Positions 1,561-20,465 of a DNA stretch of 64,000 nt are shown piece after piece. Each line of letters opens with the position of its first letter. Positions within the stretch are counted from its first letter, which is position 1. Position numbers and translations under genes: made by a program. Under the pieces are notes generated by a model that was given only the letters and a program-made list of their open reading frames with translations, ran no database searches and was not told where the DNA came from. The stretch lies in the sequence record phage_1. One strand, written 5' to 3'.

Positions 1561-2048
1561 CCACGATAGCGTTCGATGGAAAAGTCTTAGCTGCTGACGG
1601 CCAGTTAACCCGTGGGTCGAATATCTGCAACCTGAATACCCAGAAGTTATTCGTCTGTCCTCCTGACGAGGAGTGGTGGATTACCGGTGAACGAATTGTG
1701 GTGTTCGGGGTAAGCGGCGACATCACAGGACAATTGGCCCTGCTGGAAACGGTCCGCTTGAGACCCGGCTACAAGGGGTTAACACAAAGCTCGCAGTTAC
1801 CTGCGAAGATGGATTTTACTTTCCTGATGCTTTTGGCCTCAGGAAAAGCGATAGTCGGTGGGAAGCGTGAAGACGACGTGTCGTTGTGGTGGAGTGAAGC
1901 CACACCACCTCTGGCAACCGGAAGCGGTTACGAGTATGCGTTGGGTGCGATGAAGATGGGCGCGAATGCGGTTCGTGCTGTTGAGATTGCGTCCGAATGC
2001 GATATCTACACCGGTGGTGAGATTAGCACTTACGAACTACGGAGGTGA
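1557..2048 (+). CDS. Ntn-hydrolase / HslV-like peptidase-family protein
   Basis: ATGA overlap with the upstream stop. Begins M-TTIAFDGKVLAADGQ (N-terminal Thr) and has ATGSGYEYALGAM, both typical of the proteasome-beta/HslV fold. True start is 1557, not 1494. Confidence 0.65.
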   Translation: MTTIAFDGKVLAADGQLTRGSNICNLNTQKLFVCPPDEEWWITGERIVVFGVSGDITGQLALLETVRLRPGYKGLTQSSQLPAKMDFTFLMLLASGKAIVGGKREDDVSLWWSEATPPLATGSGYEYALGAMKMGANAVRAVEIASECDIYTGGEISTYELRR

Positions 2049-2140
2049 ATCATGCGGGAGTCAGAAGCACGCAAGCTTGACCCCATCAATCGCCTGCGAT
2101 AACGGGGTAGCGCATCCGTATAAACACGTTAAAGAATTCT

Positions 2141-2216
2141 AGGAAAGTGACGCAATTGGTAGCGTACCGGTCTCCAAAACCGGCTGTTTAGAGTTCGAGT
2201 CTCTACTTTCCTGCCA
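2141..2216 (+). tRNA. trnW: tRNA-Trp (CCA)
   Basis: Full cloverleaf: acceptor AGGAAAG/CTTTCCT, D stem ACGC/GCGT, anticodon arm CCGGT-CTCCAAA-ACCGG (CCA at 2174-2176), T loop TTCGAGT, encoded 3' CCA. Confidence 0.95.
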
Positions 2217-2282
2217 CATTTAGCCAACAAGGCCATGATTCAAAGCAGAATGACACCGAATGTCTAACTGCGGAGAATAATC

Positions 2283-2525
2283 ATGAACTTGTATTTGCTA
2301 GAACGAACTGACGATATCGGGTATGATGAATTTGATTCCATAATCGTGGCGGCTCCTACGGAGCAAGCTGCGTGTGCAATTCCTCCCGACTGTGGTCATT
2401 GGATGGACTGCCGCTGGTTACCGAAAGAGCGCTGGGATGAAGGGCTTACCCTGACCGTTACTCTTATCGGTACTACGCACTATCCTGCTGGGACCGTCGT
2501 TCATGAATCGTTCAATGCTGGCTAA
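2283..2525 (+). CDS. Small hypothetical phage protein (paralog of 985..1560)
   Basis: GGAG SD. The 5' DNA cggagaat(t)aa(a)tcatgaacttgtat is shared with ORF 985. Confidence 0.8.
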   Translation: MNLYLLERTDDIGYDEFDSIIVAAPTEQAACAIPPDCGHWMDCRWLPKERWDEGLTLTVTLIGTTHYPAGTVVHESFNAG

Positions 2526-2704
2526 ACAGTGGGCTTCGGCCCACTAACCCTATTCGAGCCGTGATACTTACTCAGATTGTGCGGGTTGATGTCCCGCATG
2601 AGCCGGTAGCAGCTCAGACCTACGGTAGACCAATAAATCCGTAGCAGCCAGGTACACAAAGCACCAGGTCGCTTGTACAGGATGCTGGGTATCTGACCGG
2701 TCAT
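2522..2704 (-). CDS. Possible 60-aa hypothetical protein
   Basis: GAGGT SD 5' of the ATG on the minus strand; converges on the 2528-2545 hairpin. Confidence 0.35.
   Translation of the reverse strand: MTGQIPSILYKRPGALCTWLLRIYWSTVGLSCYRLMRDINPHNLSKYHGSNRVSGPKPTV
2528..2545. terminator. Hairpin with TTCG loop
   Basis: AGTGGGC-TTCG-GCCCACT directly after the ORF 2283 stop; no T-run. Confidence 0.5.
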
Positions 2705-2732
2705 AACCTCATTCGATACGAGACACGTTTAT

Positions 2733-3105
2733 GCATGAAATACTCCAGTACATCAGGATGTTGATTTCCAACGTCCGGTTCTGGGTATTCAATCATGTTT
2801 GGTTTACAGGCGATGGGTTTTCCCGCAAGGGCCCCACTTACAGACTGGCGTCTCCACGACAACCGTCCCTAGGGGACAGGCAAGCACCGGCCCATTAAGC
2901 CGCCACGCTACGCCTGTAAATCCACAATCTGATAACCGAATGGGATTGAGTTCCCAGTGTTAGGGTGACTATGTGTCACCGTAGGCGCGGTACCTCATAC
3001 GGCCGGTACGCCACGAATGTACGTGATAGCGGGTGGTGCTTGGAGACGCTAAGACCTGACCTTGCGGCCAGGCTCAGAAGAAGAAGTCCATCACCCGCAT
3101 TCAGA
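2733..3105 (+). ncRNA. Candidate structured ncRNA block 3
   Basis: Starts at the G of a TATG (2730-2733). Stems 2756-2763/2769-2776, 2801-2812/2911-2923 (ends ...ATCCA) and 3029-3038/3089-3098, plus a CCC-GCAA-GGG GNRA hairpin. Confidence 0.55.
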
Positions 3106-3300
3106 AATGAATTTAGGTTAATTATTGGAAGTGATGAAATCGTTTACGTGATAACTTAGTAGTATGCAACGAACAATACCAGAGTGACTTTACGAGGTTA
3201 CTGTGGTATATGTCGGTGCTCCGGGCAACGTGTTGCCGTAGATAAGCCCGAGGGAGCTGAGTGCACTAACACACACCGGGATGCACCGGCACCTTACAAT

Positions 3301-3369
3301 GGCTTTGTAGCTCAGGTAGGTAGAGCAACCTCTTCGAGGAAGGTCGCCGGTTCGAGTCCGGTCAAAGCA
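3301..3369 (+). ncRNA. tRNA-like element with shortened anticodon arm
   Basis: Acceptor GCTTTG/CAAAGC, TA at 8-9, D arm GCTC-AGGTAGGTA-GAGC, variable AGGTC and T arm GCCGG-TTCGAGT-CCGGT are canonical. The anticodon arm is only 13 nt (ACCTCTTCGAGGA) versus 17. No encoded CCA. Confidence 0.75.
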
Positions 3370-3370
3370 A

Positions 3371-3452
3371 GAGCAGCGAAGTTAGAGGAATTAACACCCG
3401 ACTCATAATCGGATATTTCGACGGTTCGAATCCGTGCCGTTTGCTCGCCCCA
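3371..3452 (+). pseudogene. Degenerate tRNA-Met/Ile2 (CAT)
   Basis: Anticodon arm CCGA-CTCATAA-TCGG (CAT at 3404-3406) and T loop GGTTCGAATCC are present. The acceptor stem is bulged and U8 is missing. Confidence 0.6.
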
Positions 3453-3790
3453 TTTGTGTTATCCTTATCCCGAAGGCATTCGAAATAAGACGCGTATCCA
3501 CACACGGGTCAAGGGTAACACGAACCACTTCCGCGGTCACCGTGTCCATTGCCGCCTACCTGCATGGGCTGTCCTCCGACACGGTGACTTCGGGCCAACT
3601 TACAGGCCAGGGCCGTTTGGGTTTTTCTTACGCATCCATCCAGAGCCACCTCGCGCCCTAGTCTGTTACCCCTTTTCTGTTCCTGGTTTGCCAACTAAAT
3701 CAATTAAGCCTGGTGCGTTGCCCTGGGAACAGAAAAACTTATTCGGTTACACACCGAACCCACCCACGAGGGATATGTCGTGGACTACCA
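3453..3790 (+). ncRNA. Candidate structured ncRNA block downstream of the tRNA-like pair
   Basis: Two perfect 11-bp stems (3536-3546/3578-3588 and 3673-3683/3726-3736). The overlapping N-terminal extension of ORF 3454 is not credible. Confidence 0.5.
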
Positions 3791-3828
3791 ATAGAAGCAG
3801 CAATAGTAGAAGTAAGAAGGAAAGCAAC

Positions 3829-4650
3829 ATGTTTACAGTTAAACGTGTAATTGATGGTGACCGCATTATTACCGAACATGAAAAAGTTCGTATCGGTGAC
3901 CGTAAGTCTCGTGTATTCCGCGAGGCGTTAAAGATGCTCGAGAACGAGCGCTTCGACATCGTTGTCGATGATGAAAAGTTAGCCCTTAATCCGGGGTTAA
4001 AACGCGTTGCCCCTGATGTGGCTGATCCGAACACCATGCATTTGTCTGACTACTGCAGCTGGTCGCACAGATTATATAAAAGTCAGGTTTATGCACACAC
4101 GTATTTGCGGCAGCTTTTCCCCAACCTTATTATCCCCGATTTGGAAACGGTCGAGGTGTTTAACTGCAACGCACGCGAGTTTATTAGCTACGTGCTAGAT
4201 AATAAGGGCAATGCTATCTTGGTATTGGACACAAATTCCCGCATACCTGATGCTGTGGCTAGCATACGTGGTGAAATCATCGGTTACGGTACTCCCCCAG
4301 AGAAATTAGGCTGGTACAAACCATCTCCTGATAGCGACATGGCGATCATTGTCTACACTCAGGAAGAACTGCAACAAGTCGAATTAGAGCCTGGTCCATC
4401 TATCGAGTTCACTGATGTCCAGGAGCAGTCGCAGTGGATTAACGGTGAGTCTGTTGTTACTGTTTTAAAAGGCGCTCGCCCTGGCGACCGGTCAGTCGAT
4501 GAACTGATTGGCGCAATGTGCATCGAAGAAGAATCTGGATACGATCCTGATAACCAGATCAGTACCGGTGCGTTGTACGAACTGTTTTATAAAGGCGACG
4601 AAGTCTACGTGGTTAACTCTCACGGTAAGACTACCGACGTCCTTCGCTGA
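3829..4650 (+). CDS. Hypothetical protein (273 aa)
   Basis: AAGGA SD before ATG 3829; terminator downstream. Confidence 0.8.
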   Translation: MFTVKRVIDGDRIITEHEKVRIGDRKSRVFREALKMLENERFDIVVDDEKLALNPGLKRVAPDVADPNTMHLSDYCSWSHRLYKSQVYAHTYLRQLFPNLIIPDLETVEVFNCNAREFISYVLDNKGNAILVLDTNSRIPDAVASIRGEIIGYGTPPEKLGWYKPSPDSDMAIIVYTQEELQQVELEPGPSIEFTDVQEQSQWINGESVVTVLKGARPGDRSVDELIGAMCIEEESGYDPDNQISTGALYELFYKGDEVYVVNSHGKTTDVLR

Positions 4651-4740
4651 ATTAGCTAACGCCCAGTAGCTATGTTCCTGACGATTAGCCCTCGTCTGAC
4701 CTTGTAAGACCTTGTAGATTTACATGCCAACACCAGGGAA

Positions 4741-4782
4741 GTCCTCACTCTTCGGAGTGAGGACAACTCTTTTATTTTTTTT
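4741..4782 (+). terminator. Intrinsic terminator
   Basis: GTCCTCACTC-TTCG-GAGTGAGGAC, then a T-rich tract. Confidence 0.85.
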
Positions 4783-4800
4783 TGTATCCCAAATATTCAC

Positions 4801-4816
4801 AGATAGATATTACCTA
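4801..4816 (+). promoter_or_regulatory. Class A phage promoter motif (AGATAGATATTAYCT)
   Basis: One of 8 intergenic or upstream copies of the motif; precedes ORF 4875. Confidence 0.7.
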
Positions 4817-4874
4817 AGTGAGATGAGAAAGCCTCATCTGAATTTCCCCAACTCGACTATAAAAGGTAAGCATC

Positions 4875-5825
4875 ATGTACAGACCAAGTAATCCTAGTGC
4901 TATTGAAGGATTAAACCAGGATGGCTTCAGCCTCGCAGAAGCAACCCGCATTCGACCTTTCTTACCTCGCAGATTCTTCCCTTTCGGTTCGTTATACAGA
5001 ACGAATTTCGACGCTTGGGAAGCGATACGTGCTGTAAAAGATGCACTACAGTACAAGAACTTCGAATTCCGATTTGTTTTCAAATGGGGCAACGGCGAAT
5101 TGCTCCACCACTTCGGATTCCAACAGAACGAGTTCATTGAGTATACCTCACCTACGTACCACACCAGGTTCTTAAGTATCGAATTCGTTCGCCATTTCGG
5201 CGATGCACTCTTTACGGAACGGGCTACAGATGAAAACCACGGACGTAGGCTGATGTTAACGAACGGCGCACTGCGCATCAAGATGAATCGTTTACGGGAA
5301 GCGTATAACCAGCTTATCAATCCTGAACCGGTAATGTTTCCAACTGTAGCTGATTTGAACATTACACCGCTCCAGTTGCCTGTGGATGTGGATAGACCGA
5401 TTCTGGCAATCCACGCTCTCCAGGCAGGCTATGCAAACTGGTATAAAGAGCACAGTCTCCCGAACACCAGATTGAACATCGCACCGTTTGAGTTGTGCCT
5501 GTTCTTAACGTTACGCAAACAGCTCGAGCCAGAAAACTTAGACTTACGTTATCTGGCTAAAACAGATAGCGGTAATTACTACCCAACGACCTGGATGCTG
5601 GCGGCTGTACTACCCGGCGGTGAAATTATCGGTAACCCAGTCACCGATGTTCAACAGTTACCATCACCGTTAGCACCACCGAAAGATTCAATCTATCCGT
5701 ACGCTTCGTGGTACGCGAGCAGTATTGGCGTGAGATGGTTAATGTTACACGTTCCTGAAGAGGTCTATAATTTATTCCCGCATGAGCAATGGCTCCGTGC
5801 GTATGAAAATCGGTTTGGTTACTAG
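4875..5825 (+). CDS. Hypothetical protein (316 aa)
   Basis: AAGGT SD, long ORF, flanked by a promoter motif and a terminator. Confidence 0.85.
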   Translation: MYRPSNPSAIEGLNQDGFSLAEATRIRPFLPRRFFPFGSLYRTNFDAWEAIRAVKDALQYKNFEFRFVFKWGNGELLHHFGFQQNEFIEYTSPTYHTRFLSIEFVRHFGDALFTERATDENHGRRLMLTNGALRIKMNRLREAYNQLINPEPVMFPTVADLNITPLQLPVDVDRPILAIHALQAGYANWYKEHSLPNTRLNIAPFELCLFLTLRKQLEPENLDLRYLAKTDSGNYYPTTWMLAAVLPGGEIIGNPVTDVQQLPSPLAPPKDSIYPYASWYASSIGVRWLMLHVPEEVYNLFPHEQWLRAYENRFGY

Positions 5826-5836
5826 TCGATGCTTTT

Positions 5837-5871
5837 GGGGGAACTTCGGTTCCCTCTTTTTTTTCTTTTTT
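5837..5871 (+). terminator. Intrinsic terminator
   Basis: GGGGGAAC-TTCG-GTTCCCTC plus T-run. Confidence 0.85.
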
Positions 5872-5907
5872 CACGACTGCCTCAGAATCTTAATGGAGGA
5901 AGTTACC

Positions 5908-6324
5908 ATGATTACGCAGTGCTCATACCAGACGCAAGATTTATTTAAAGCATTGGAAGAAAATAAGCTACCCACGACTTTAAGACCGCAGTGCAGTTAT
6001 TCAAGAATGCTTGCAAGTGAGGTCTTTCCGGTGCTAATGCAGTTGCCTCAATTCCAACCGTGGCTCGACTCGCTAGATGTGGTAGATGTTGTGGCTATCT
6101 ACACTGGGTCAGACACACCAACAATAAATACAAGCGAGTGTTTATCCCGTAGCGAATCGTCGGCGATAAATGAAATGCCGCAGCTAATGCCTTCTTTATT
6201 CGATTCGATGTGCGCTGCAGTTATGCAGAAACGACTACCTTATGAGGAAGTATTCGCCATTGTGTTAGACAGCATCCACGCAATGAATTATAAACACTAT
6301 AAAACCCTCGGAACCTTACACTGA
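5908..6324 (+). CDS. Hypothetical protein
   Basis: GGAGG SD before ATG 5908. Confidence 0.75.
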   Translation: MITQCSYQTQDLFKALEENKLPTTLRPQCSYSRMLASEVFPVLMQLPQFQPWLDSLDVVDVVAIYTGSDTPTINTSECLSRSESSAINEMPQLMPSLFDSMCAAVMQKRLPYEEVFAIVLDSIHAMNYKHYKTLGTLH

Positions 6325-6391
6325 CTTTTTTACGGCAGGCACCTATCTTGTAGGGAGTCTGTGCTGTAATAGATTCCAAAGGAGATGCTCG

Positions 6392-6781
6392 ATGAAAAAC
6401 AAACTGCGTCCGCTGGACGTGATTATGGCGCATCCGGATACCCTCAAGAAAATTAAAGTGGTCAATGAACTTGACCGTGGTCTCCTGGATACTATTCAAT
6501 GGGGTTTTACTTTCCACCCCGATGAAGAGAACAACACGCGTCAATTAGATGTCTGCGACGGCGTAGAAATTGATTGGTCTTCTAACGAAGGCTTCAACGA
6601 TGTCGTCGATTATGTCAAACAAGCCACCGTTCCACCTGTGTTTCCCGTAGCTGGTTTAGCGGAACACACAATTTCTCTCCGCCGACTGGTTAACGCTCAA
6701 CCAGAAATCGTGCGTGAAGGCGAGGCGTGGACGTCAGGCATTACCCATCATCTTAAGGATGTGCTGGGTGTTGCCGGTTAA
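6392..6781 (+). CDS. Hypothetical protein (129 aa)
   Basis: AAGGAG SD; TTAC-N15-TGTA motif at 6330-6352. Confidence 0.8.
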   Translation: MKNKLRPLDVIMAHPDTLKKIKVVNELDRGLLDTIQWGFTFHPDEENNTRQLDVCDGVEIDWSSNEGFNDVVDYVKQATVPPVFPVAGLAEHTISLRRLVNAQPEIVREGEAWTSGITHHLKDVLGVAG

Positions 6782-6832
6782 AAAAGAAGAAGTACCTCTA
6801 CTCACGTAGAGGTACGGAATCTTTCTTTTTTT
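6781..6832. terminator. Bidirectional terminator
   Basis: GTACCTCTAC-TCAC-GTAGAGGTAC flanked by A- and T-runs between convergent genes. Confidence 0.8.
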
Positions 6833-6833
6833 G

Positions 6834-7646
6834 TTACGACTTGAAGCGTCCACCGTTCATGTAGTTCCAACGGTTTCCGATGTTGTCGTTGTGGACCAGA
6901 CAACGTTGCATTTTCGGCAAGGTGTCTTCGAACATTTGACCCGCGTCCGAGTAACCTTCAATAACGTTTCTGAAGGCACCGAACTCCATACCATTTTCCA
7001 GTTTACCGGAGTCCATGTCGAAGATCATGGTGTTGTAAATATATTGCTTAACAGCCATGACTGCCAGCTCACCTACAACCGGATAGAATGCTGGTTTGAT
7101 TTCGTTCATCTCCTGGGATAGTTCGTACTTCACCACGAGTTTGGTAGAGTAAACGAACATGCCTGGGTCTTTGATACGGATGGTATTCGGGCCGAGTACC
7201 TCGACCTCTGGTGAGGCGATACGTGGCATCGCCGACTGACTATCAACCACTTGTTGGGTGGATGCTAATACGCCAGAGGTGGCACCGTCCAGATATGAAC
7301 CTGCGGGAGGCATGGTGTACGCCTGTCCGGCAACGGGTGTTACAGAAATGTGGGCATCCAGAATAGGACGACCGCCTGTTTTGATGTCGTCGAGATAATA
7401 CACGCGACTGAAATAATCTTGCGTGTCGTTATCCCAAGGGACACCTTGCAAATCTACTTCTTGATACTGCCCCATTCTGGAGATTTCAGGGACCAGAATC
7501 TCACGAATAACACGTTGTTGGATTTCGTTATCTACAGAGCTTGCAATTCCCAGTAACTTGAGGTTTTCTGGAACAAAAGCCGCCTGTAGAATCGGGGCAG
7601 GAATATGCTGTCTGATTTTACGCAGACAGTAGTCGATAACATTCAT
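6834..7646 (-). CDS. Conserved jumbo-phage protein, probably virion structural (270 aa)
   Basis: GGAG SD before MNVIDYCL. The minus-strand orientation matches other structural genes in the window; function is inferred. Confidence 0.7.
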   Translation of the reverse strand: MNVIDYCLRKIRQHIPAPILQAAFVPENLKLLGIASSVDNEIQQRVIREILVPEISRMGQYQEVDLQGVPWDNDTQDYFSRVYYLDDIKTGGRPILDAHISVTPVAGQAYTMPPAGSYLDGATSGVLASTQQVVDSQSAMPRIASPEVEVLGPNTIRIKDPGMFVYSTKLVVKYELSQEMNEIKPAFYPVVGELAVMAVKQYIYNTMIFDMDSGKLENGMEFGAFRNVIEGYSDAGQMFEDTLPKMQRCLVHNDNIGNRWNYMNGGRFKS

Positions 7647-7766
7647 TCTAAGGCTCCTATGAAGCTCGTAGGACAACTCATACCATCGGGTAATGCTATC
7701 CCATTGCCTGACATTAAAATACGTTTTACGACCTTTATGTGCGCACCATACTCGAAGAAATTTTGC

Positions 7767-7780
7767 ATAGATATTATCTT
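7767..7780 (+). promoter_or_regulatory. Class A phage promoter motif
   Basis: ATAGATATTATCTT upstream of ORF 7810. Confidence 0.7.
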
Positions 7781-7809
7781 CGTGAATTATCCTTAAGGAG
7801 CATTTCTCG

Positions 7810-8130
7810 ATGACGCGCATGTTCTTTAATTTCTCTCCAGGGACAAATGAACAGATTGTGCCTGCGGACATGTTACTGTGCGCGATACAAGAAGTCATTT
7901 ATCCCGGCACGCATGAGTTTCCACGCGAGTGGACACGCATTGCCGAAAGTTATTTTGGCACGGAAGCGTGGTTTGTTATTTCGGCGTTGGGCCGAAACCA
8001 TAGCTATCCCTTTCATTACAAAAATGGAGTTGTGCAAACGTGGTCAGAATATACCTCGAACCAGCTGCGGTTCATTCTAGCTTCTGGGGGCCTGTCGATG
8101 CTTCCCAGTACGCTACCGCTCTGCGGATGA
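7810..8130 (+). CDS. Hypothetical protein
   Basis: AAGGAG SD; first gene of a coupled operon. Confidence 0.8.
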   Translation: MTRMFFNFSPGTNEQIVPADMLLCAIQEVIYPGTHEFPREWTRIAESYFGTEAWFVISALGRNHSYPFHYKNGVVQTWSEYTSNQLRFILASGGLSMLPSTLPLCG

Positions 8131-8690
8131 GCCAAAAAGAACGCGAGATGTTAACTGTACAACTGTTACACACTGCGCTCGAAGATATCTTTTACTCCGT
8201 TCCGGAAATGCCTAATGCACGTATGGAACCTTTGCTGGAACCTTATACTGACGCTTTTAATCTCACGATGATGTTGGTGGCTGACCAGATCATACTTCCA
8301 CCGAAAACAGTTCCTGTGGAACGTACACACGTTTCCAGTGGCGGTTTGGGTACTCCGGTTAATAAGACGAAAGAGACCGTAGCGATTTTACGTTCTACCG
8401 AATATCTTATCGGATTAGCATTCGAAGACTGTTACAACAGTTTCCTGGACAGTATCCATGCGCTTGTGGAGAATGCTGTGAAAGCCGCCAAACACCCGTT
8501 TAATCGTTATGCGACGATTAAACTGGAACCACACATAACCCGTCGTGGGCAGGTGCAATCTCTGGAGTTACAAAATGGAGAAGACATCAGATTCATCCAC
8601 TACCGCCAATGCTTCCCAAACAAACGATATCGTCCGTCTGGTACTGATCGATCACATTGCCTCGACGGCATACGTCAGGATATTGAATGA
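8127..8690 (+). CDS. Hypothetical protein
   Basis: ATGA overlap with the previous stop. Confidence 0.75.
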   Translation: MSQKEREMLTVQLLHTALEDIFYSVPEMPNARMEPLLEPYTDAFNLTMMLVADQIILPPKTVPVERTHVSSGGLGTPVNKTKETVAILRSTEYLIGLAFEDCYNSFLDSIHALVENAVKAAKHPFNRYATIKLEPHITRRGQVQSLELQNGEDIRFIHYRQCFPNKRYRPSGTDRSHCLDGIRQDIE

Positions 8691-18675: not shown

Positions 18676-18732
18676 GCAGGCTGAAATCGTAGTAAGTCTA
18701 TCGATTCCAAACTTGAAGGTGCAATGGCACCG
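18676..18732 (+). repeat. 57-bp direct repeat, copy B (chmA-RNAP spacer, includes SD and ATG of beta-prime)
   Basis: Near-identical to 17675-17732 apart from a few small indels. Confidence 0.9.
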
Positions 18733-20109
18733 ATTGACAGAATGAGAAAGGTACCAAAATTCTACGGAATATCCGGCCGGTTGGTTAGTCAGGATAACTA
18801 TTTGTCCGATTTGCAAATAGAAGCTGCTGCCAAAGGTATTAAACCACCCACTATTATTAACGATGTCGCCGTTAACGGGGATGCGATCGAGGTTGCTGAA
18901 CTTATCGATCGCATGGTACAGAACAGAATCGTTGACGAAGAACTGAACTCTGCACCGATTTGTAGTTTGGATTGTCCGGCACCGATCGCGCATCGTTACA
19001 ATCTCGGTTGTAAGTGTCCGACGTGTGGCTATGTTGTAACTGAACATCGAATTGAATCCGATGTCTGGTTACGTGCACCTGATGAAATGGGTAACTTCGT
19101 CAACCCACGATTCTGGGCAATGTTCAATGCTTTCTTTAATAGCAAGTTGAAGAAGTTTGAACGTAACAAGGTCACTATCGAACGCGGTAATGACTTGATG
19201 ATGTGGATGATTGACCCGTATTACCGTATAGAAGAACCAGACGGTAAACGCGCACATGCTGTGAAACGTGTATTGGAAGAACATGGTTTCGTTCGTGGCT
19301 TGCGCAATCTGGTTGATAACCACGTTAGTATCTTTAACATCCTTACCACGCCAGAAGCCTGGAAGGAAATCTTCGCACCTAATCGGCATAACGCCGCTGA
19401 AGGTGAACGCTTACGTTTACAATGGAAGGAGCTATTCGAAACGCAACGTCACGCATTCTTTCCAAGACATTTACCGCTAATCTCCTCTAAACTTATCGTT
19501 ACTGAGGAAGGTCGTCGTGGTGTCATGGTAGACCCAGTGTTCACGGGTGCTATTGACGCGGTGAAAAATATCGCGTTGCTCTATACGCGGCGTAAAGCGA
19601 TCGAACCACGTTTTCTGATTAGTCGTGCTTTGAAGGCGAACCGTCAGCTAACGTACTTCCACATGGACTTCCGTCGTGAGTCTATGGAAGGTAAACCGGG
19701 TGACTATCGTGCGAAATTGGGTTCTACCCATATCCCGTTCGGTGGTCGTGCAACCATCTCACCTATCTCAGAACCACACGATGCCTGGAAGTTAAAAGCA
19801 CCGTGGCGTTGGATGGTTGGGTTGATGTCGACCCACATCGAGAACAAACTGCTACGACGGGGTTATTCGTCGCGGCAATGTGAGCGTATCGTTGCAAAAG
19901 CGGCAATGCAGTATGACCCGCTTGTAGACGAAATCTTTAAAGAACTGATTCGTGAATCCCCAGGCGGTCTTGGGATCATGGTCATACCGTTACGTAACCC
20001 AACGCTGGTACAGTTGTCTATTCAAACGCTGTACATCGATGAAGTTGTTACCGATGTTAACCAGTGTTCGCTGCGTATCTCTGACCGTGTGATCAAGATG
20101 GCTAACGGT
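18724..20109 (+). CDS. rpoC: Non-virion RNAP beta-prime N-terminal subunit, exon 1 (phiKZ gp55-like)
   Basis: Zn ribbon CSLDC..CKCPTC, GGRATISP and RNPTL. Ends ..KMANG at the predicted 5' splice site. Confidence 0.85.
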
Positions 20110-20465
20110 TCGAAAAGAGCCCCATCGGACGGGAAACCTCTGATGCGTATTCTCCTGAAATGCTGGGAAACCCTAAAGCGTATCTACCAGAAATGGGGAC
20201 GAAAGTCTGAAACAACAGATACGATGGCCTACGCTAAACAATACTGCTAACGGTTGTGATAATGGGTAATCAGCAGCGAAGCCTCGTGAGAGGAACGTTC
20301 AACGACTATCGCTGAAATGCGAGTAGGGGTCCCAGTGGACTTCGAAGTGGGAGAACACCTAAGGCGATAGCTATGGTGAAGATATAGTCTGTGCCTTATC
20401 GAGAGATAAGGAGGGTGTCTTAGCACACCTGCTGTATACGGAAACGGTATACGATGGACAAACAG
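20110..20465 (+). mobile_element. Group I self-splicing intron, 356 nt, no homing endonuclease
   Basis: P1 GGTTC-GAAAA-GAGCC has a U-G pair at 20109. Conserved elements: P AAATGCTGGGAAA (20158), Q AATCAGCAG (20268), R GTTCAACGACTA (20297), S GAAGATATAGTCT (20378). P7 GACTAT/ATAGTC, P9 CCTTATC-GAGA-GATAAGG, terminal G at 20465. Splicing restores NGDFDGD in frame. Confidence 0.92.

What the first reader, a model, noticed from the sequence alone, without database searches (positions are those of the whole stretch)
2730..3105. Structured RNA block containing a ~124-nt module ending in CCA
An irregular hairpin (2733-2798) starts at the G of TATG. It is followed by a module closed by GGTTTACAGGCG/CGCCTGTAAATCC (2801-2812/2911-2923) whose 3' end is ...TCCA, like an acceptor stem, with internal ATGGG/CCCAT pairing, a GNRA hairpin and a possible pseudoknot (TGGCG 2846-2850/CGCCA 2901-2905). 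A further three-way element is closed by 3029-3038/3089-3098. This may be a precursor processed into several small RNAs, including a non-tRNA RNA with a CCA end.
Basis: partly seen in the sequence, partly recalled or inferred. Interest (0 to 1): 0.65.

Follow-up and report, generated by a model that had tools for sequence, protein, structure and literature searches.

The report
Small phage gene inside structured RNA
The flagged block is a real, conserved, heavily folded RNA of SPN3US-like jumbo phages at the head of their tRNA gene cluster, but it carries an unannotated small protein gene and is not a tRNA-like RNA with a CCA end.

Summary
The window is Escherichia phage vB_EcoM_Lh1B, an SPN3US-like jumbo phage. 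The hairpin 2733-2798 has z -5.4. The 12-bp stem 2801-2812/2911-2922 encloses GNRA-capped and other hairpins. The stem 3029-3038/3089-3098 is also there.

Homologues occur once per genome in four genera (Seoulvirus, Machinavirus, Erskinevirus, Wellingtonvirus), always just upstream of the tRNA array. Covariation strongly supports the 3' half. On 27 sequences 91% of cells pair and the covariation score is 0.305, against 0.126 shuffled and 0.04-0.08 slid.

- The CCA at 2922-2924 is not conserved, even within Seoulvirus.
- The TGGCG/CGCCA pseudoknot is unsupported.
- The 3' element is one long hairpin, not a three-way junction.

It is kept in all 27 homologues and ends at one invariant UAA in a hairpin loop. 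Its N-terminal part (about 26 residues, a predicted helix) evolves like a protein. Its 3' half evolves like RNA.

No Rfam family matches, and tRNA, tmRNA, RNase P, group I intron, GOLLD/ROOL and T4 rnaC/rnaD were all rejected. Best reading: a new clade-specific dual-function transcript, a small-protein mRNA fused with a structured RNA. Its function is unknown.

The parts
2731..2898 (+). Small ORF (55 aa here; phrog_26199), unannotated in this record. The N-terminal residues 2-26 are a predicted helix and the C-terminal 29 residues are disordered.
   Evidence: An ATG ORF of 55-69 codons ending at the same TAA is present in all 21 distinct homologues first collected, and the ORF stretch is kept in the six further sequences found later. 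N-terminal pN/pS is 0.2-0.5. Substitutions follow codon position 3>1>2. Frame-0 BLOSUM scores far exceed the other two frames, with no stops. PHROG hit E 1e-4. AlphaFold gives a helix at residues 2-26 with pLDDT 81-84 and a tail below 50.
2733..2798 (+). H0, a long irregular hairpin covering the N-terminal coding part. It begins at the G of the ATG.
   Evidence: z -5.38. Equivalent hairpins are predicted in all clades with different sequences.
2801..2922 (+). Domain closed by P1 (2801-2812 with 2911-2922) that holds hairpins H1-H4. It overlaps the last 32 codons of the ORF.
   Evidence: The inner 9 bp are invariant in 14 Seoulvirus and Machinavirus sequences, including synonymous sites, so there is no covariation. 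The outer 3 bp are not conserved. This stretch has 0 substitutions between Lh1B and SPAsTU while the adjacent N-terminal synonymous divergence is 0.68.
2815..2834 (+). H1, a GNRA-capped hairpin (CCC-GCAA-GGG, extended by GGG/CCC).
   Evidence: Loops are GCAA, GUAA or GUGA. Stem pair C-G changes to U-A in 4 sequences. The outer extension covaries between subgroups.
2842..2853 (+). H2, a short hairpin (AGAC-TGGC-GTCT) whose form differs by lineage.
   Evidence: Local folds in all clades. In Erskinevirus and Wellingtonvirus this hairpin carries the GNRA loop, GAGA or GCAA.
2865..2877 (+). H3 hairpin.
   Evidence: At least four different stems sit at the same place: GUCCC/GGGAC, GUCCG/CGGAC, UUCAC/GUGAG and CGUCUA/UAGACG.
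2883..2909 (+). H4 (AGC/GCU plus CCGG/CCG). Its 9-nt loop holds the ORF stop codon at 2896-2898.
   Evidence: The stem is invariant in Seoulvirus and Machinavirus. It changes from CCGG/CCGG to CCAG/CUGG in five sequences: SNU11 (L014), L016, L022, L026 and L050. Within the loop only the UAA is invariant.
2925..2941 (+). Invariant joint ACAAUCUGA plus a variable stretch complementary to 2797-2809, giving an alternative distal partner for the P1 5' strand.
   Evidence: 88% of cells pair in Seoulvirus and Machinavirus. This is the dominant closing helix in Erskinevirus and Wellingtonvirus. Cognate strand pairs are more stable than swapped ones. The pairing is weak in some Machinavirus sequences.
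2941..2956 (+). Ha, an invariant hairpin (UGGGA-UURAGU-UCCCA).
   Evidence: 100% paired in 27 sequences, with no variation that could show covariation.
2964..2980 (+). Hb hairpin.
   Evidence: 4 of 6 pairs show changes on both sides in 9-11 sequences each.
2984..3012 (+). Hc, a variable hairpin cassette. The type found here is shared almost identically with pSal-SNUABM-04, L029, Asesino and L022.
   Evidence: Three to five alternative cassettes are distributed mosaically across genera. The loop resembles the L17-leader consensus but scores 22 bits against a 34.9-bit cut-off.
3025..3102 (+). Hd, a long irregular 3' hairpin. The main stem is 3029-3041/3084-3098 and the inner stem is 3049-3061/3066-3077. 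The internal loops are invariant.
   Evidence: 97% of cells pair in the outer helix and 7 pairs show changes on both sides. SNU4, Caitlin and L029 extend the inner helix by GGUU/AACC. G-U pairs fix the + strand.

Best explanation
Shown here. Window 2731 to about 3102 is one conserved + strand unit of SPN3US-like jumbo phages and combines two things.

(a) A small protein gene (2731-2898, 55 aa). Only the N-terminal part, about 26 residues and a predicted single helix, is constrained as protein.

(b) A roughly 370-nt RNA fold that runs through and beyond the gene:
- a long hairpin over the N-terminal codons;
- a stem-closed domain of four hairpins, one GNRA-capped, over the C-terminal codons;
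- about 200 nt of untranslated, more widely conserved RNA with an invariant joint, two hairpins, an exchangeable hairpin cassette and a long 3' hairpin.

The unit sits once per genome, co-oriented with and immediately upstream of the phage tRNA array.

Inferred. The transcript has two mutually exclusive states.
- Folded state: the start codon sits at the foot of the first hairpin and the ORF is buried in helices. The RNA is then a compact, stable non-coding particle whose invariant loops and joints are binding surfaces for a still unknown partner.
- Translated state: a ribosome must melt the first hairpin, P1 and H1-H4, and it stops at the invariant UAA in the H4 loop, 12 nt before the 3' strand of P1.

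I consider the RNA the primary product, because it is conserved more tightly than the peptide. The ORF would then either supply a helical, basic-tailed peptide partner or act as an unfolding switch. It is not a tRNA-like, CCA-ended RNA.
For: Identity and distribution:
- The window is OK428535.1.
- Homologues are found only in Seoulvirus, Machinavirus, Erskinevirus, Wellingtonvirus and matching metagenome contigs, always before the tRNA array.
- There is one copy in SPN3US.

ORF:
- It is retained with the same stop in every homologue.
- The coding signature appears only in the N-terminal half.
- It matches phrog_26199.
- The predicted structure is a helix at 2-26 plus a disordered tail.

RNA:
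- The 3' half has 91% of cells paired and a covariation score of 0.305, against 0.126 shuffled and 0.04-0.08 slid.
- H0 is stable in all clades.
- H1, H3 and H4 show compensatory changes.
- The C-terminal codons show pN about equal to pS, and 0 changes where the neighbouring synonymous divergence is 0.68.
- Frequent G-U pairs fit only the + strand.

Expression: RNA-seq contigs of a close relative cover the unit at depths above the flanks.
Against: - No read-level data were available, so the transcript ends, the abundance of a discrete RNA and translation of the ORF are all unproven (one search gives contigs only).
- P1 has no covariation, being invariant, and is replaced by another pairing in two genera.
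- In Seoulvirus and Machinavirus the ATG lies in TATG, the phiKZ late-promoter motif whose G is +1 (PMC7598289). If that motif is used here, the transcript would lack the start codon.
- No Shine-Dalgarno sequence is clearly conserved.
- No partner, target or activity is known. The two-state mechanism is inference from anatomy.
Confidence: 0.5

Rival explanations
1. Pure non-coding RNA. Transcription starts at the G of TATG (2733), as at phiKZ-type late promoters, so the ATG is not in the RNA and the ORF is not translated. The product is a 5'-hairpin-capped structured ncRNA.
For: TATG precedes the unit in Seoulvirus and Machinavirus, and H0 starts exactly at its G. The phiKZ nvRNAP late promoters are T(-3)ATG(+1) (PMC7598289). 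In run X9 a contig starts at 2736 with higher depth than the one upstream, 8476 against 5582. Nucleotide conservation exceeds protein conservation in the 3' half of the ORF.
Against: The frame-0 coding signature is present in all three clades. The ORF and its stop are kept in every homologue, with length changes in multiples of three. Erskinevirus and Wellingtonvirus have ACATG or AAATG rather than TATG, and their hairpin starts 6-7 nt after the ATG. Contigs cannot show RNA ends.
Confidence: 0.2
2. One reading: a precursor cut into several small RNAs, including a ~124-nt RNA (2801-2924) with an acceptor-like stem and a CCA end, comparable to the T4 stable RNAs of the tRNA cluster.
For: The 12-bp stem exists. 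The unit lies in a tRNA cluster. T4 rnaD ends in ACCA and rnaC has a T-arm, so the kind exists. Contig breaks and a roughly 4-fold depth drop occur at 2923-2952 in run X9.
Against: The CCA and the outer 3 bp are not conserved, even in SPAsTU and pEa_SNUABM_29. There is no T-loop, and the tRNA model and ARAGORN are silent here. The stem is replaced in two genera. The module overlaps a conserved ORF whose stop lies inside it. The element's model finds nothing in the T4 tRNA region.
Confidence: 0.07
3. Leader-peptide attenuator for the tRNA array. Ribosome progress through the ORF, whose conserved Trp codon opens the P1 5' strand, selects between two partners for that strand (2911-2922 or 2927-2941) and so controls read-through or processing into the downstream tRNAs.
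For: The unit always sits directly upstream of the array. The 5' strand has two mutually exclusive partners. The stop codon position is fixed 12 nt before the proximal partner.
Against: No terminator-like hairpin with a U-tract lies on the + strand. The distal pairing is weak or absent in several Machinavirus sequences. The unit is kept intact in Lh1B and SPN3US, where the array has decayed to pseudo-tRNAs. A 200-nt conserved 3' domain is more than an attenuator needs.
Confidence: 0.1
4. Translation-silenced small toxin or regulator mRNA (type I toxin-like, hok-style). The extensive fold only serves to keep a potent small protein untranslated until processing.
For: A small ORF lies fully inside stable helices, with its start codon at a helix foot. 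The mRNA is structured over its whole length.
Against: The peptide is not a hydrophobic transmembrane peptide. Its helix contains Arg, Asn, His and Gln, and its tail is basic and disordered. The most conserved part is the untranslated 3' domain with invariant loops. No antisense partner is known.
Confidence: 0.08
5. Ordinary protein-coding DNA: the annotated CDS 2971-3159 and/or 2522-2704 explain the conservation.
For: They are annotated as hypothetical proteins in OK428535.1.
Against: There are no PHROG or Pfam matches. They are not annotated in most relatives. Substitutions across 2964-3098 are compensatory in helices. Conservation stops at about 3102, inside the annotated CDS.
Confidence: 0.02

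Closest known systems
Phage T4 stable RNAs rnaC (species 1) and rnaD (species 2) in the tRNA gene cluster
   Same: Non-tRNA structured RNAs of unknown function encoded in a phage tRNA cluster on the same strand as the tRNAs.
   Different: The T4 RNAs lie at the distal end of the array, are 119-139 nt long and have tRNA-like ends, ACCA in rnaD and a T-arm in rnaC. This element lies at the head of the array, is about 370 nt long, has no T-arm or conserved CCA and contains an ORF. There is no sequence or structure match.
Large phage-associated structured RNAs often found beside tRNA genes (GOLLD RF01998, ROOL RF03087)
   Same: Multi-helix ncRNA of unknown function, phage-encoded and adjacent to tRNAs (the adjacency of GOLLD and ROOL to tRNAs is from my own knowledge of the literature).
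   Different: No Rfam match even at E up to 10. This element is about half the size or less, overlaps a conserved ORF and is restricted to one clade of jumbo phages.
Dual-function (coding plus structured) bacterial RNAs such as RNAIII/hld and SgrS/SgrT
   Same: One transcript carries both a small ORF under protein-level selection and RNA structure under nucleotide-level selection.
   Different: Here the structure overlaps the whole ORF, and the ORF's 3' half is constrained as RNA only. No base-pairing target is known. The context is a phage tRNA cluster.
Leader-peptide attenuators (trp-type)
   Same: A small ORF lies upstream of an RNA operon, and one strand inside the ORF has two alternative partners.
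   Different: There is no terminator hairpin with a U-tract. A large conserved 3' domain is present. The phage uses its own RNA polymerases.
L17 ribosomal-protein leader (RF03132)
   Same: The 19-nt loop and inner stem of the Hc cassette differ at one position from the family consensus. This is the only hit of that model in the SPN3US genome.
   Different: The score is 22 bits against a gathering score of 34.9. The outer helix is mismatched. Only one of several alternative Hc cassettes shows the resemblance.

Membership tests
tRNA / tRNA-like RNA with CCA end | Cloverleaf or at least acceptor plus T-arm recognised by tRNA models | tested here: not met
   Rfam RF00005 and ARAGORN find tRNAs at 2141-2216 and 3301-3370 but nothing in 2730-3105, even at E up to 10.
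tRNA / tRNA-like RNA with CCA end | Conserved 3' CCA after the closing stem | tested here: not met
   The positions of TCCA (2921-2924) read AUAC or CUAC in the other Seoulvirus and Machinavirus sequences. The outer stem pairs are unpaired in 4-5 of 14.
T4 rnaC/rnaD-type stable RNAs | Sequence or structure similarity to the T4 RNAs | tested here: not met
   Model R1 with filters off gives only noise (at most 5.8 bits) on the T4 tRNA region.
Group I intron | Match to RF00028 and a P7 helix with the G-binding pair | tested here: not met
   RF00028 hits only 20090-20411. The candidate GAC/GUC 'P7' is broken by an uncompensated C-to-G change in SNU4 and Caitlin, where a different pairing (GGUU/AACC) forms.
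tmRNA, RNase P RNA, SRP RNA, 6S RNA, GOLLD, ROOL, YrlA | Match to the curated covariance model | tested here: not met
   No hit in the element at E up to 10 in the window or in five relatives. ARAGORN finds no tmRNA.
Dual-function coding/structured RNA | ORF under purifying selection at the protein level | tested here: met
   pN/pS 0.2-0.5, codon-position bias and frame-specific BLOSUM excess, all for the N-terminal half.
Dual-function coding/structured RNA | RNA structure under selection | tested here: met
   Covariation in Hb and Hd, H1, H3 and H4 and H0.
Dual-function coding/structured RNA | Demonstrated non-coding activity (target or partner) | not testable with these tools
   Needs experiments.
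Leader-peptide attenuator | Mutually exclusive alternative helices involving an ORF-embedded strand | tested here: inconclusive
   Both partners exist, but the distal one is weak in several Machinavirus sequences and the proximal one is weak in Erskinevirus and Wellingtonvirus.
Leader-peptide attenuator | Terminator hairpin with U-tract before the regulated genes | tested here: not met
   No + strand terminator-like site in 1900-3900. The terminators of the phage RNA polymerases are unknown.
Type I toxin mRNA (hok-like) | Small hydrophobic membrane peptide | tested here: not met
   The sequence has charged and polar residues throughout its single helix and a basic disordered tail. No transmembrane predictor was run.
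L17 ribosomal protein leader RF03132 | Score at or above the gathering threshold | tested here: not met
   22.0-22.2 bits against 34.9.

The most novel reading that the evidence does not exclude
A new class of compact, ribozyme-grade structured phage RNA: at least 9 helices, a GNRA tetraloop, invariant single-stranded joints and an exchangeable hairpin cassette. It would act in trans on the host translation or RNA-processing machinery. One cassette type nearly copies the loop of the L17 ribosomal-protein leader. Translation of the embedded ORF would serve as a built-in unfolding switch or supply the RNA's peptide partner.
Probability: 0.12. Interest if true: 0.8.

Novelty: new variant of a known kind. 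Interest (0 to 1): 0.6.

Why it matters
SPN3US is the genetic model for nucleus-forming jumbo phages of enterobacteria, and its relatives are candidates for phage therapy and fire-blight control. This locus adds an RNA family that matches no Rfam model and an unannotated conserved small gene to their core early region.

It is also an unusually clean case of protein-level and RNA-level selection dividing a single short ORF between them. It offers a concrete, testable handle on how these phages organise expression or processing at the head of their tRNA arrays.

It corrects the annotation. The small ORF 2731-2898 is missing from the record, and the CDS 2971-3159 is probably spurious.

Tried and rejected
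- Rfam at gathering and at E up to 10, on the window and on five relatives: nothing in the element except a sub-threshold L17-leader resemblance.
- ARAGORN: no tRNA or tmRNA there.
- Group-I-like reading of the 3' hairpin (R/S-like motifs): rejected by an uncompensated change.
- RNase P CR-I-like and SRP-like resemblances: by eye only, with no model support.
- Pseudoknot TGGCG/CGCCA: rejected. ATGGG/CCCAT: not upheld, at 67% paired and competing with a local pairing.
- Loop-loop and joint pairings of the invariant motifs with the 3' hairpin: considered by eye and dropped, because the partners do not covary.
- Model R1 found no homologue in Derbicusvirus EarlPhillipIV, Goslar, RAY, PhiEaH1, the incomplete STsAS record or the T4 tRNA region. 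Pattern scans of metagenome and genome collections gave only close relatives or chance hits.
- blastn of the Hb-Hc cassette against E. coli genomes: no match.
- Word search for the window's peptide: no homologue. With the Parshik version, only Erwinia-phage proteins were found.
- The ESM Atlas call failed because the machine was busy.
- The motif TTATATATGC, tested as a general promoter: it occurs once in the Parshik genome and not at all in the window, so no promoter claim is made.
- Upstream 5'-UTR hairpins (about 2685-2722): predicted folds are weak and inconsistent, so they are not listed as parts.
- Whole-length consensus folding per clade was too noisy for long-range 5'-3' pairings.
- RNA-seq was available only as contigs, so RNA ends could not be determined.

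Full report
**Where the window comes from.** The window is identical to Escherichia phage vB_EcoM_Lh1B (OK428535.1, genus Seoulvirus, an SPN3US-like 240-kb jumbo phage), and window coordinates equal record coordinates. The flagged block 2730-3105 lies between tRNA-Trp (2141-2216) and a decayed tRNA pair (3301-3370 and 3373-3445). The record annotates only two hypothetical CDSs here, 2522-2704 on the minus strand and 2971-3159 on the plus strand. Neither has any PHROG or Pfam support.

- The whole block folds better than dinucleotide shuffles, z -3.26.
- The hairpin 2733-2798 is very stable, z -5.38.
- The 12-bp stem 2801-2812/2911-2922, the GCAA hairpin and the stem 3029-3038/3089-3098 are all present.
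- The 124-nt module alone is only marginally better than shuffles, z -2.1.

**Relatives.** blastn and pattern scans found homologues only in Seoulvirus, Machinavirus, Erskinevirus, Wellingtonvirus and matching IMG/VR or metagenome contigs, 27 distinct sequences in all.
- In every annotated relative the element sits on the same strand as a tRNA array and directly upstream of it.
- A covariance model of the 3' half (R1) finds exactly one copy in SPN3US.
- It finds none in the next-closest jumbo phages EarlPhillipIV, Goslar, RAY and PhiEaH1, nor in the T4 tRNA region.
- At the DNA level only about 2865-3102 is recognisably conserved across all four genera.

**The 3' half is a structured RNA.** I tested a structure on a 27-sequence MAFFT alignment of 2922-3111 (A3). 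The structure contains Ha (2941-2956), Hb (2964-2980) and a single long hairpin Hd (3025-3102).
- 91.4% of cells pair, and 14 pairs change on both sides.
- The covariation score is 0.305. Column shuffles give 0.126 (0 of 500 reach the observed value), and sliding the 3' partners gives 0.04-0.08.
- The interior is not a three-way junction. It is an internal loop of invariant purine-rich strands followed by a second stem and an apical loop.
- Many pairs are G-U in most sequences, for example 3036 with 3091. That fits only the + strand RNA.
- Ha and the joint ACAAUCUGA (2925-2933) are invariant.
- Between Hb and Hd lies Hc (2984-3012). It occurs as several unrelated hairpin cassettes that are distributed mosaically. 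pSal-SNUABM-04 and pEa_SNUABM_10 are nearly identical elsewhere but carry different Hb-Hc cassettes, while Lh1B, pSal-04, L029, Asesino and L022 share one type.

- On 14 Seoulvirus and Machinavirus sequences (A4) the inner 9 bp of the closing stem are invariant on both strands. This includes the synonymous sites of the Phe-Thr-Gly codons. It argues for an RNA-level constraint but gives no covariation.
- The outer three pairs and the following 'CCA' are not conserved. SPAsTU and pEa_SNUABM_29, both Seoulvirus, already read differently.
- The GNRA hairpin is supported. Loops are GCAA, GUAA or GUGA, and a stem pair changes C-G to U-A in four sequences.
- H3 (2865-2877) shows at least four different complementary stems at the same place.
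- H4 changes from CCGG/CCGG to CCAG/CUGG in five sequences.
- The proposed pseudoknot TGGCG/CGCCA is paired in only 59% of cells. ATGGG/CCCAT is paired in 67% and competes with a local extension of the GNRA hairpin that covaries between subgroups.
- In Erskinevirus and Wellingtonvirus the proximal 3' strand is degenerate. The 5' strand pairs instead with the invariant joint and the variable stretch after it.
- The same distal complementarity exists in Seoulvirus (-10.9 kcal/mol) but is weak in several Machinavirus sequences. The 5' strand thus has two alternative partners, whose relative strength differs by clade.

- The 'TATG' at 2730-2733 contains the ATG of an ORF, 2731-2898, of 55 codons.
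- Every homologue has an ATG ORF of 55-69 codons in the same position, ending at the same TAA. Length differences are multiples of three.
- Within the 9-nt loop of H4 that holds the stop, only the UAA is invariant.
- In Erwinia phages the ORF is annotated as a hypothetical protein (for example Parshik gp9) and defines phrog_26199. The window's version matches that family over residues 5-33 with E 1e-4.

The ORF splits into two halves that evolve differently.
- N-terminal half, about 27-34 codons. Within-clade pS is 0.26-0.79 against pN 0.08-0.29. Substitutions follow codon position 3>1>2, for example 11/2/16. Frame 0 has far higher BLOSUM scores than frames 1 and 2, which also contain stops, and column-shuffle p is 0.05 or less in most pairs.
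- C-terminal half, about 28 codons. pN is about equal to pS and both are low. Lh1B and SPAsTU have no difference at all there, while their N-terminal synonymous divergence is 0.68.

The N-terminal half is therefore constrained as protein and the C-terminal half as RNA, with only the reading frame and the stop kept. AlphaFold agrees. It predicts a single helix at residues 2-26 (pLDDT 81-84) followed by a disordered, basic tail with pLDDT below 50. The family is tiny and confined to these phages.

The N-terminal coding stretch folds into one long irregular hairpin in all clades despite different sequence, z -1.1 to -6.4 in 15 sequences. In Seoulvirus and Machinavirus it starts exactly at the G of the ATG. 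RNA structure thus runs through the whole ORF.

**Expression.** Four transcriptomic runs of one study hold a close relative, but only as assembled contigs. The contigs cover 1900-3060.
- In run X9 the contig over 2736-2952 has depth 8476. The contig over 2494-2765 has 5582 and the one over 2923-3302 has 2134.
- In three other runs the contigs stop at 3047-3060, and two of them run into sequencing adapter.
- This is compatible with an RNA enriched over the unit and with ends near 2733-2736, 2923-2952 and within or after Hd. Contigs cannot establish ends or levels, so I treat it as a hint only.

**TATG as a promoter?** phiKZ late promoters are defined by T(-3)ATG(+1) (PMC7598289, read). That makes a transcript starting at G2733, and so lacking the start codon, a live alternative for Seoulvirus and Machinavirus. 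Erskinevirus and Wellingtonvirus lack TATG but keep the ATG and the coding signature.

**What it is not.**
- No Rfam family matches, including tRNA, tmRNA, RNase P, SRP, 6S, group I, GOLLD, ROOL and YrlA.
- A group-I-like reading of Hd fails a covariation test.
- T4 rnaC and rnaD are the obvious precedent for a non-tRNA stable RNA in a phage tRNA cluster. They do have tRNA-like ends, but they are unrelated to this element.
- The only sub-threshold resemblance is between Hb-Hc (the type found here) and the L17 ribosomal-protein leader, at 22 bits against a 34.9-bit cut-off. It rests mainly on a 19-nt loop and inner stem that differ from the consensus at one position. It is the sole hit of that model in SPN3US.

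**Mechanism (inference).** The anatomy implies two exclusive states.
- In the folded RNA the start codon is at the foot of H0 and the ORF is inside helices.
- A translating ribosome must open H0, P1 and H1-H4, and it terminates in the H4 loop, 12 nt before the proximal P1 strand.

The untranslated 3' domain and the RNA-constrained half of the ORF are conserved more tightly than the peptide. The fold also has the hallmarks of a compact tertiary structure: a GNRA loop, invariant joints and internal loops, and a variable peripheral cassette. I therefore take the structured RNA to be the main product. The ORF is then either a switch or the source of a helical peptide with a basic tail that could stay with the RNA.

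They are listed with their evidence in the Rival explanations section. None can be finally excluded without read-level end mapping and translation data.

**Verdict.** This is a conserved, clade-restricted RNA family with no Rfam match, fused with and overlapping an unannotated small gene. It is of moderate to high interest for phage RNA biology, and its function is open.

Noticed in passing
window 3301-3370 and 3373-3445: A tRNA-like gene (Rfam 40.9 bits; not called by ARAGORN) whose anticodon loop is cut down to a short UUCG-type loop. It is followed by a weak tRNA with a CAU anticodon (21.5 bits). Relatives carry 6-12 intact tRNAs at this position, so the array has decayed in Lh1B and SPN3US while the structured RNA upstream is kept.
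   Followed up: partly
window 20090-20411: A group I intron (RF00028, 69.4 bits) at the end of ORF 18724-20250, which is annotated as an RNA polymerase beta subunit.
   Followed up: partly
window 2283-2525 and 2530-2545: The 80-aa gene (phrog_5444, function unknown) has RNA-seq contig depths up to about 145,000, against 2,600-8,500 around it. It is followed at once by a perfect GUGGGC-UUCG-GCCCAC hairpin, after which depth falls. This looks like a 3'-end or stabiliser hairpin.
   Followed up: no
window 2964-3012 (Hb-Hc): The Hb-Hc segment exists as several unrelated cassettes shared across genera but differing between near-identical phages, which suggests exchange by recombination. The cassette present here has a 19-nt loop and stem one base away from the L17 ribosomal-protein leader consensus, though the score is sub-threshold at 22 bits.
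   Followed up: partly
window 2522-2704 (-) and 2971-3159 (+): Both CDSs annotated in OK428535.1 lack any family match and are not annotated in most relatives. The second overlaps helices Hb-Hd, whose substitutions are compensatory, so it is probably spurious.
   Followed up: partly
window about 3296-3302: Many relatives (the SPFM and SPLA phages, and the phage in the RNA-seq runs) carry about 270 bp extra. Contigs join other sequence at 3296/3302, an insertion/deletion polymorphism just before the tRNA-like gene.
   Followed up: no
L015 and L016 (Wellington-type), equivalent of window 3039-3088: In phage Wellington and one metagenome contig the inner part of the 3' hairpin, including the otherwise invariant internal-loop motifs, is replaced by a shorter divergent sequence. 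The outer stem is kept with fully compensated changes.
   Followed up: no
L006, L008, L009 (Machinavirus), at the ORF start and about 60 nt after the 3' hairpin: The AT-rich motif TATATATGC occurs both at the ATG of the small ORF and again downstream of the element, before the next gene or the tRNAs. The 10-mer TTATATATGC occurs only once in the whole Parshik genome, so it is not a general promoter word.
   Followed up: partly
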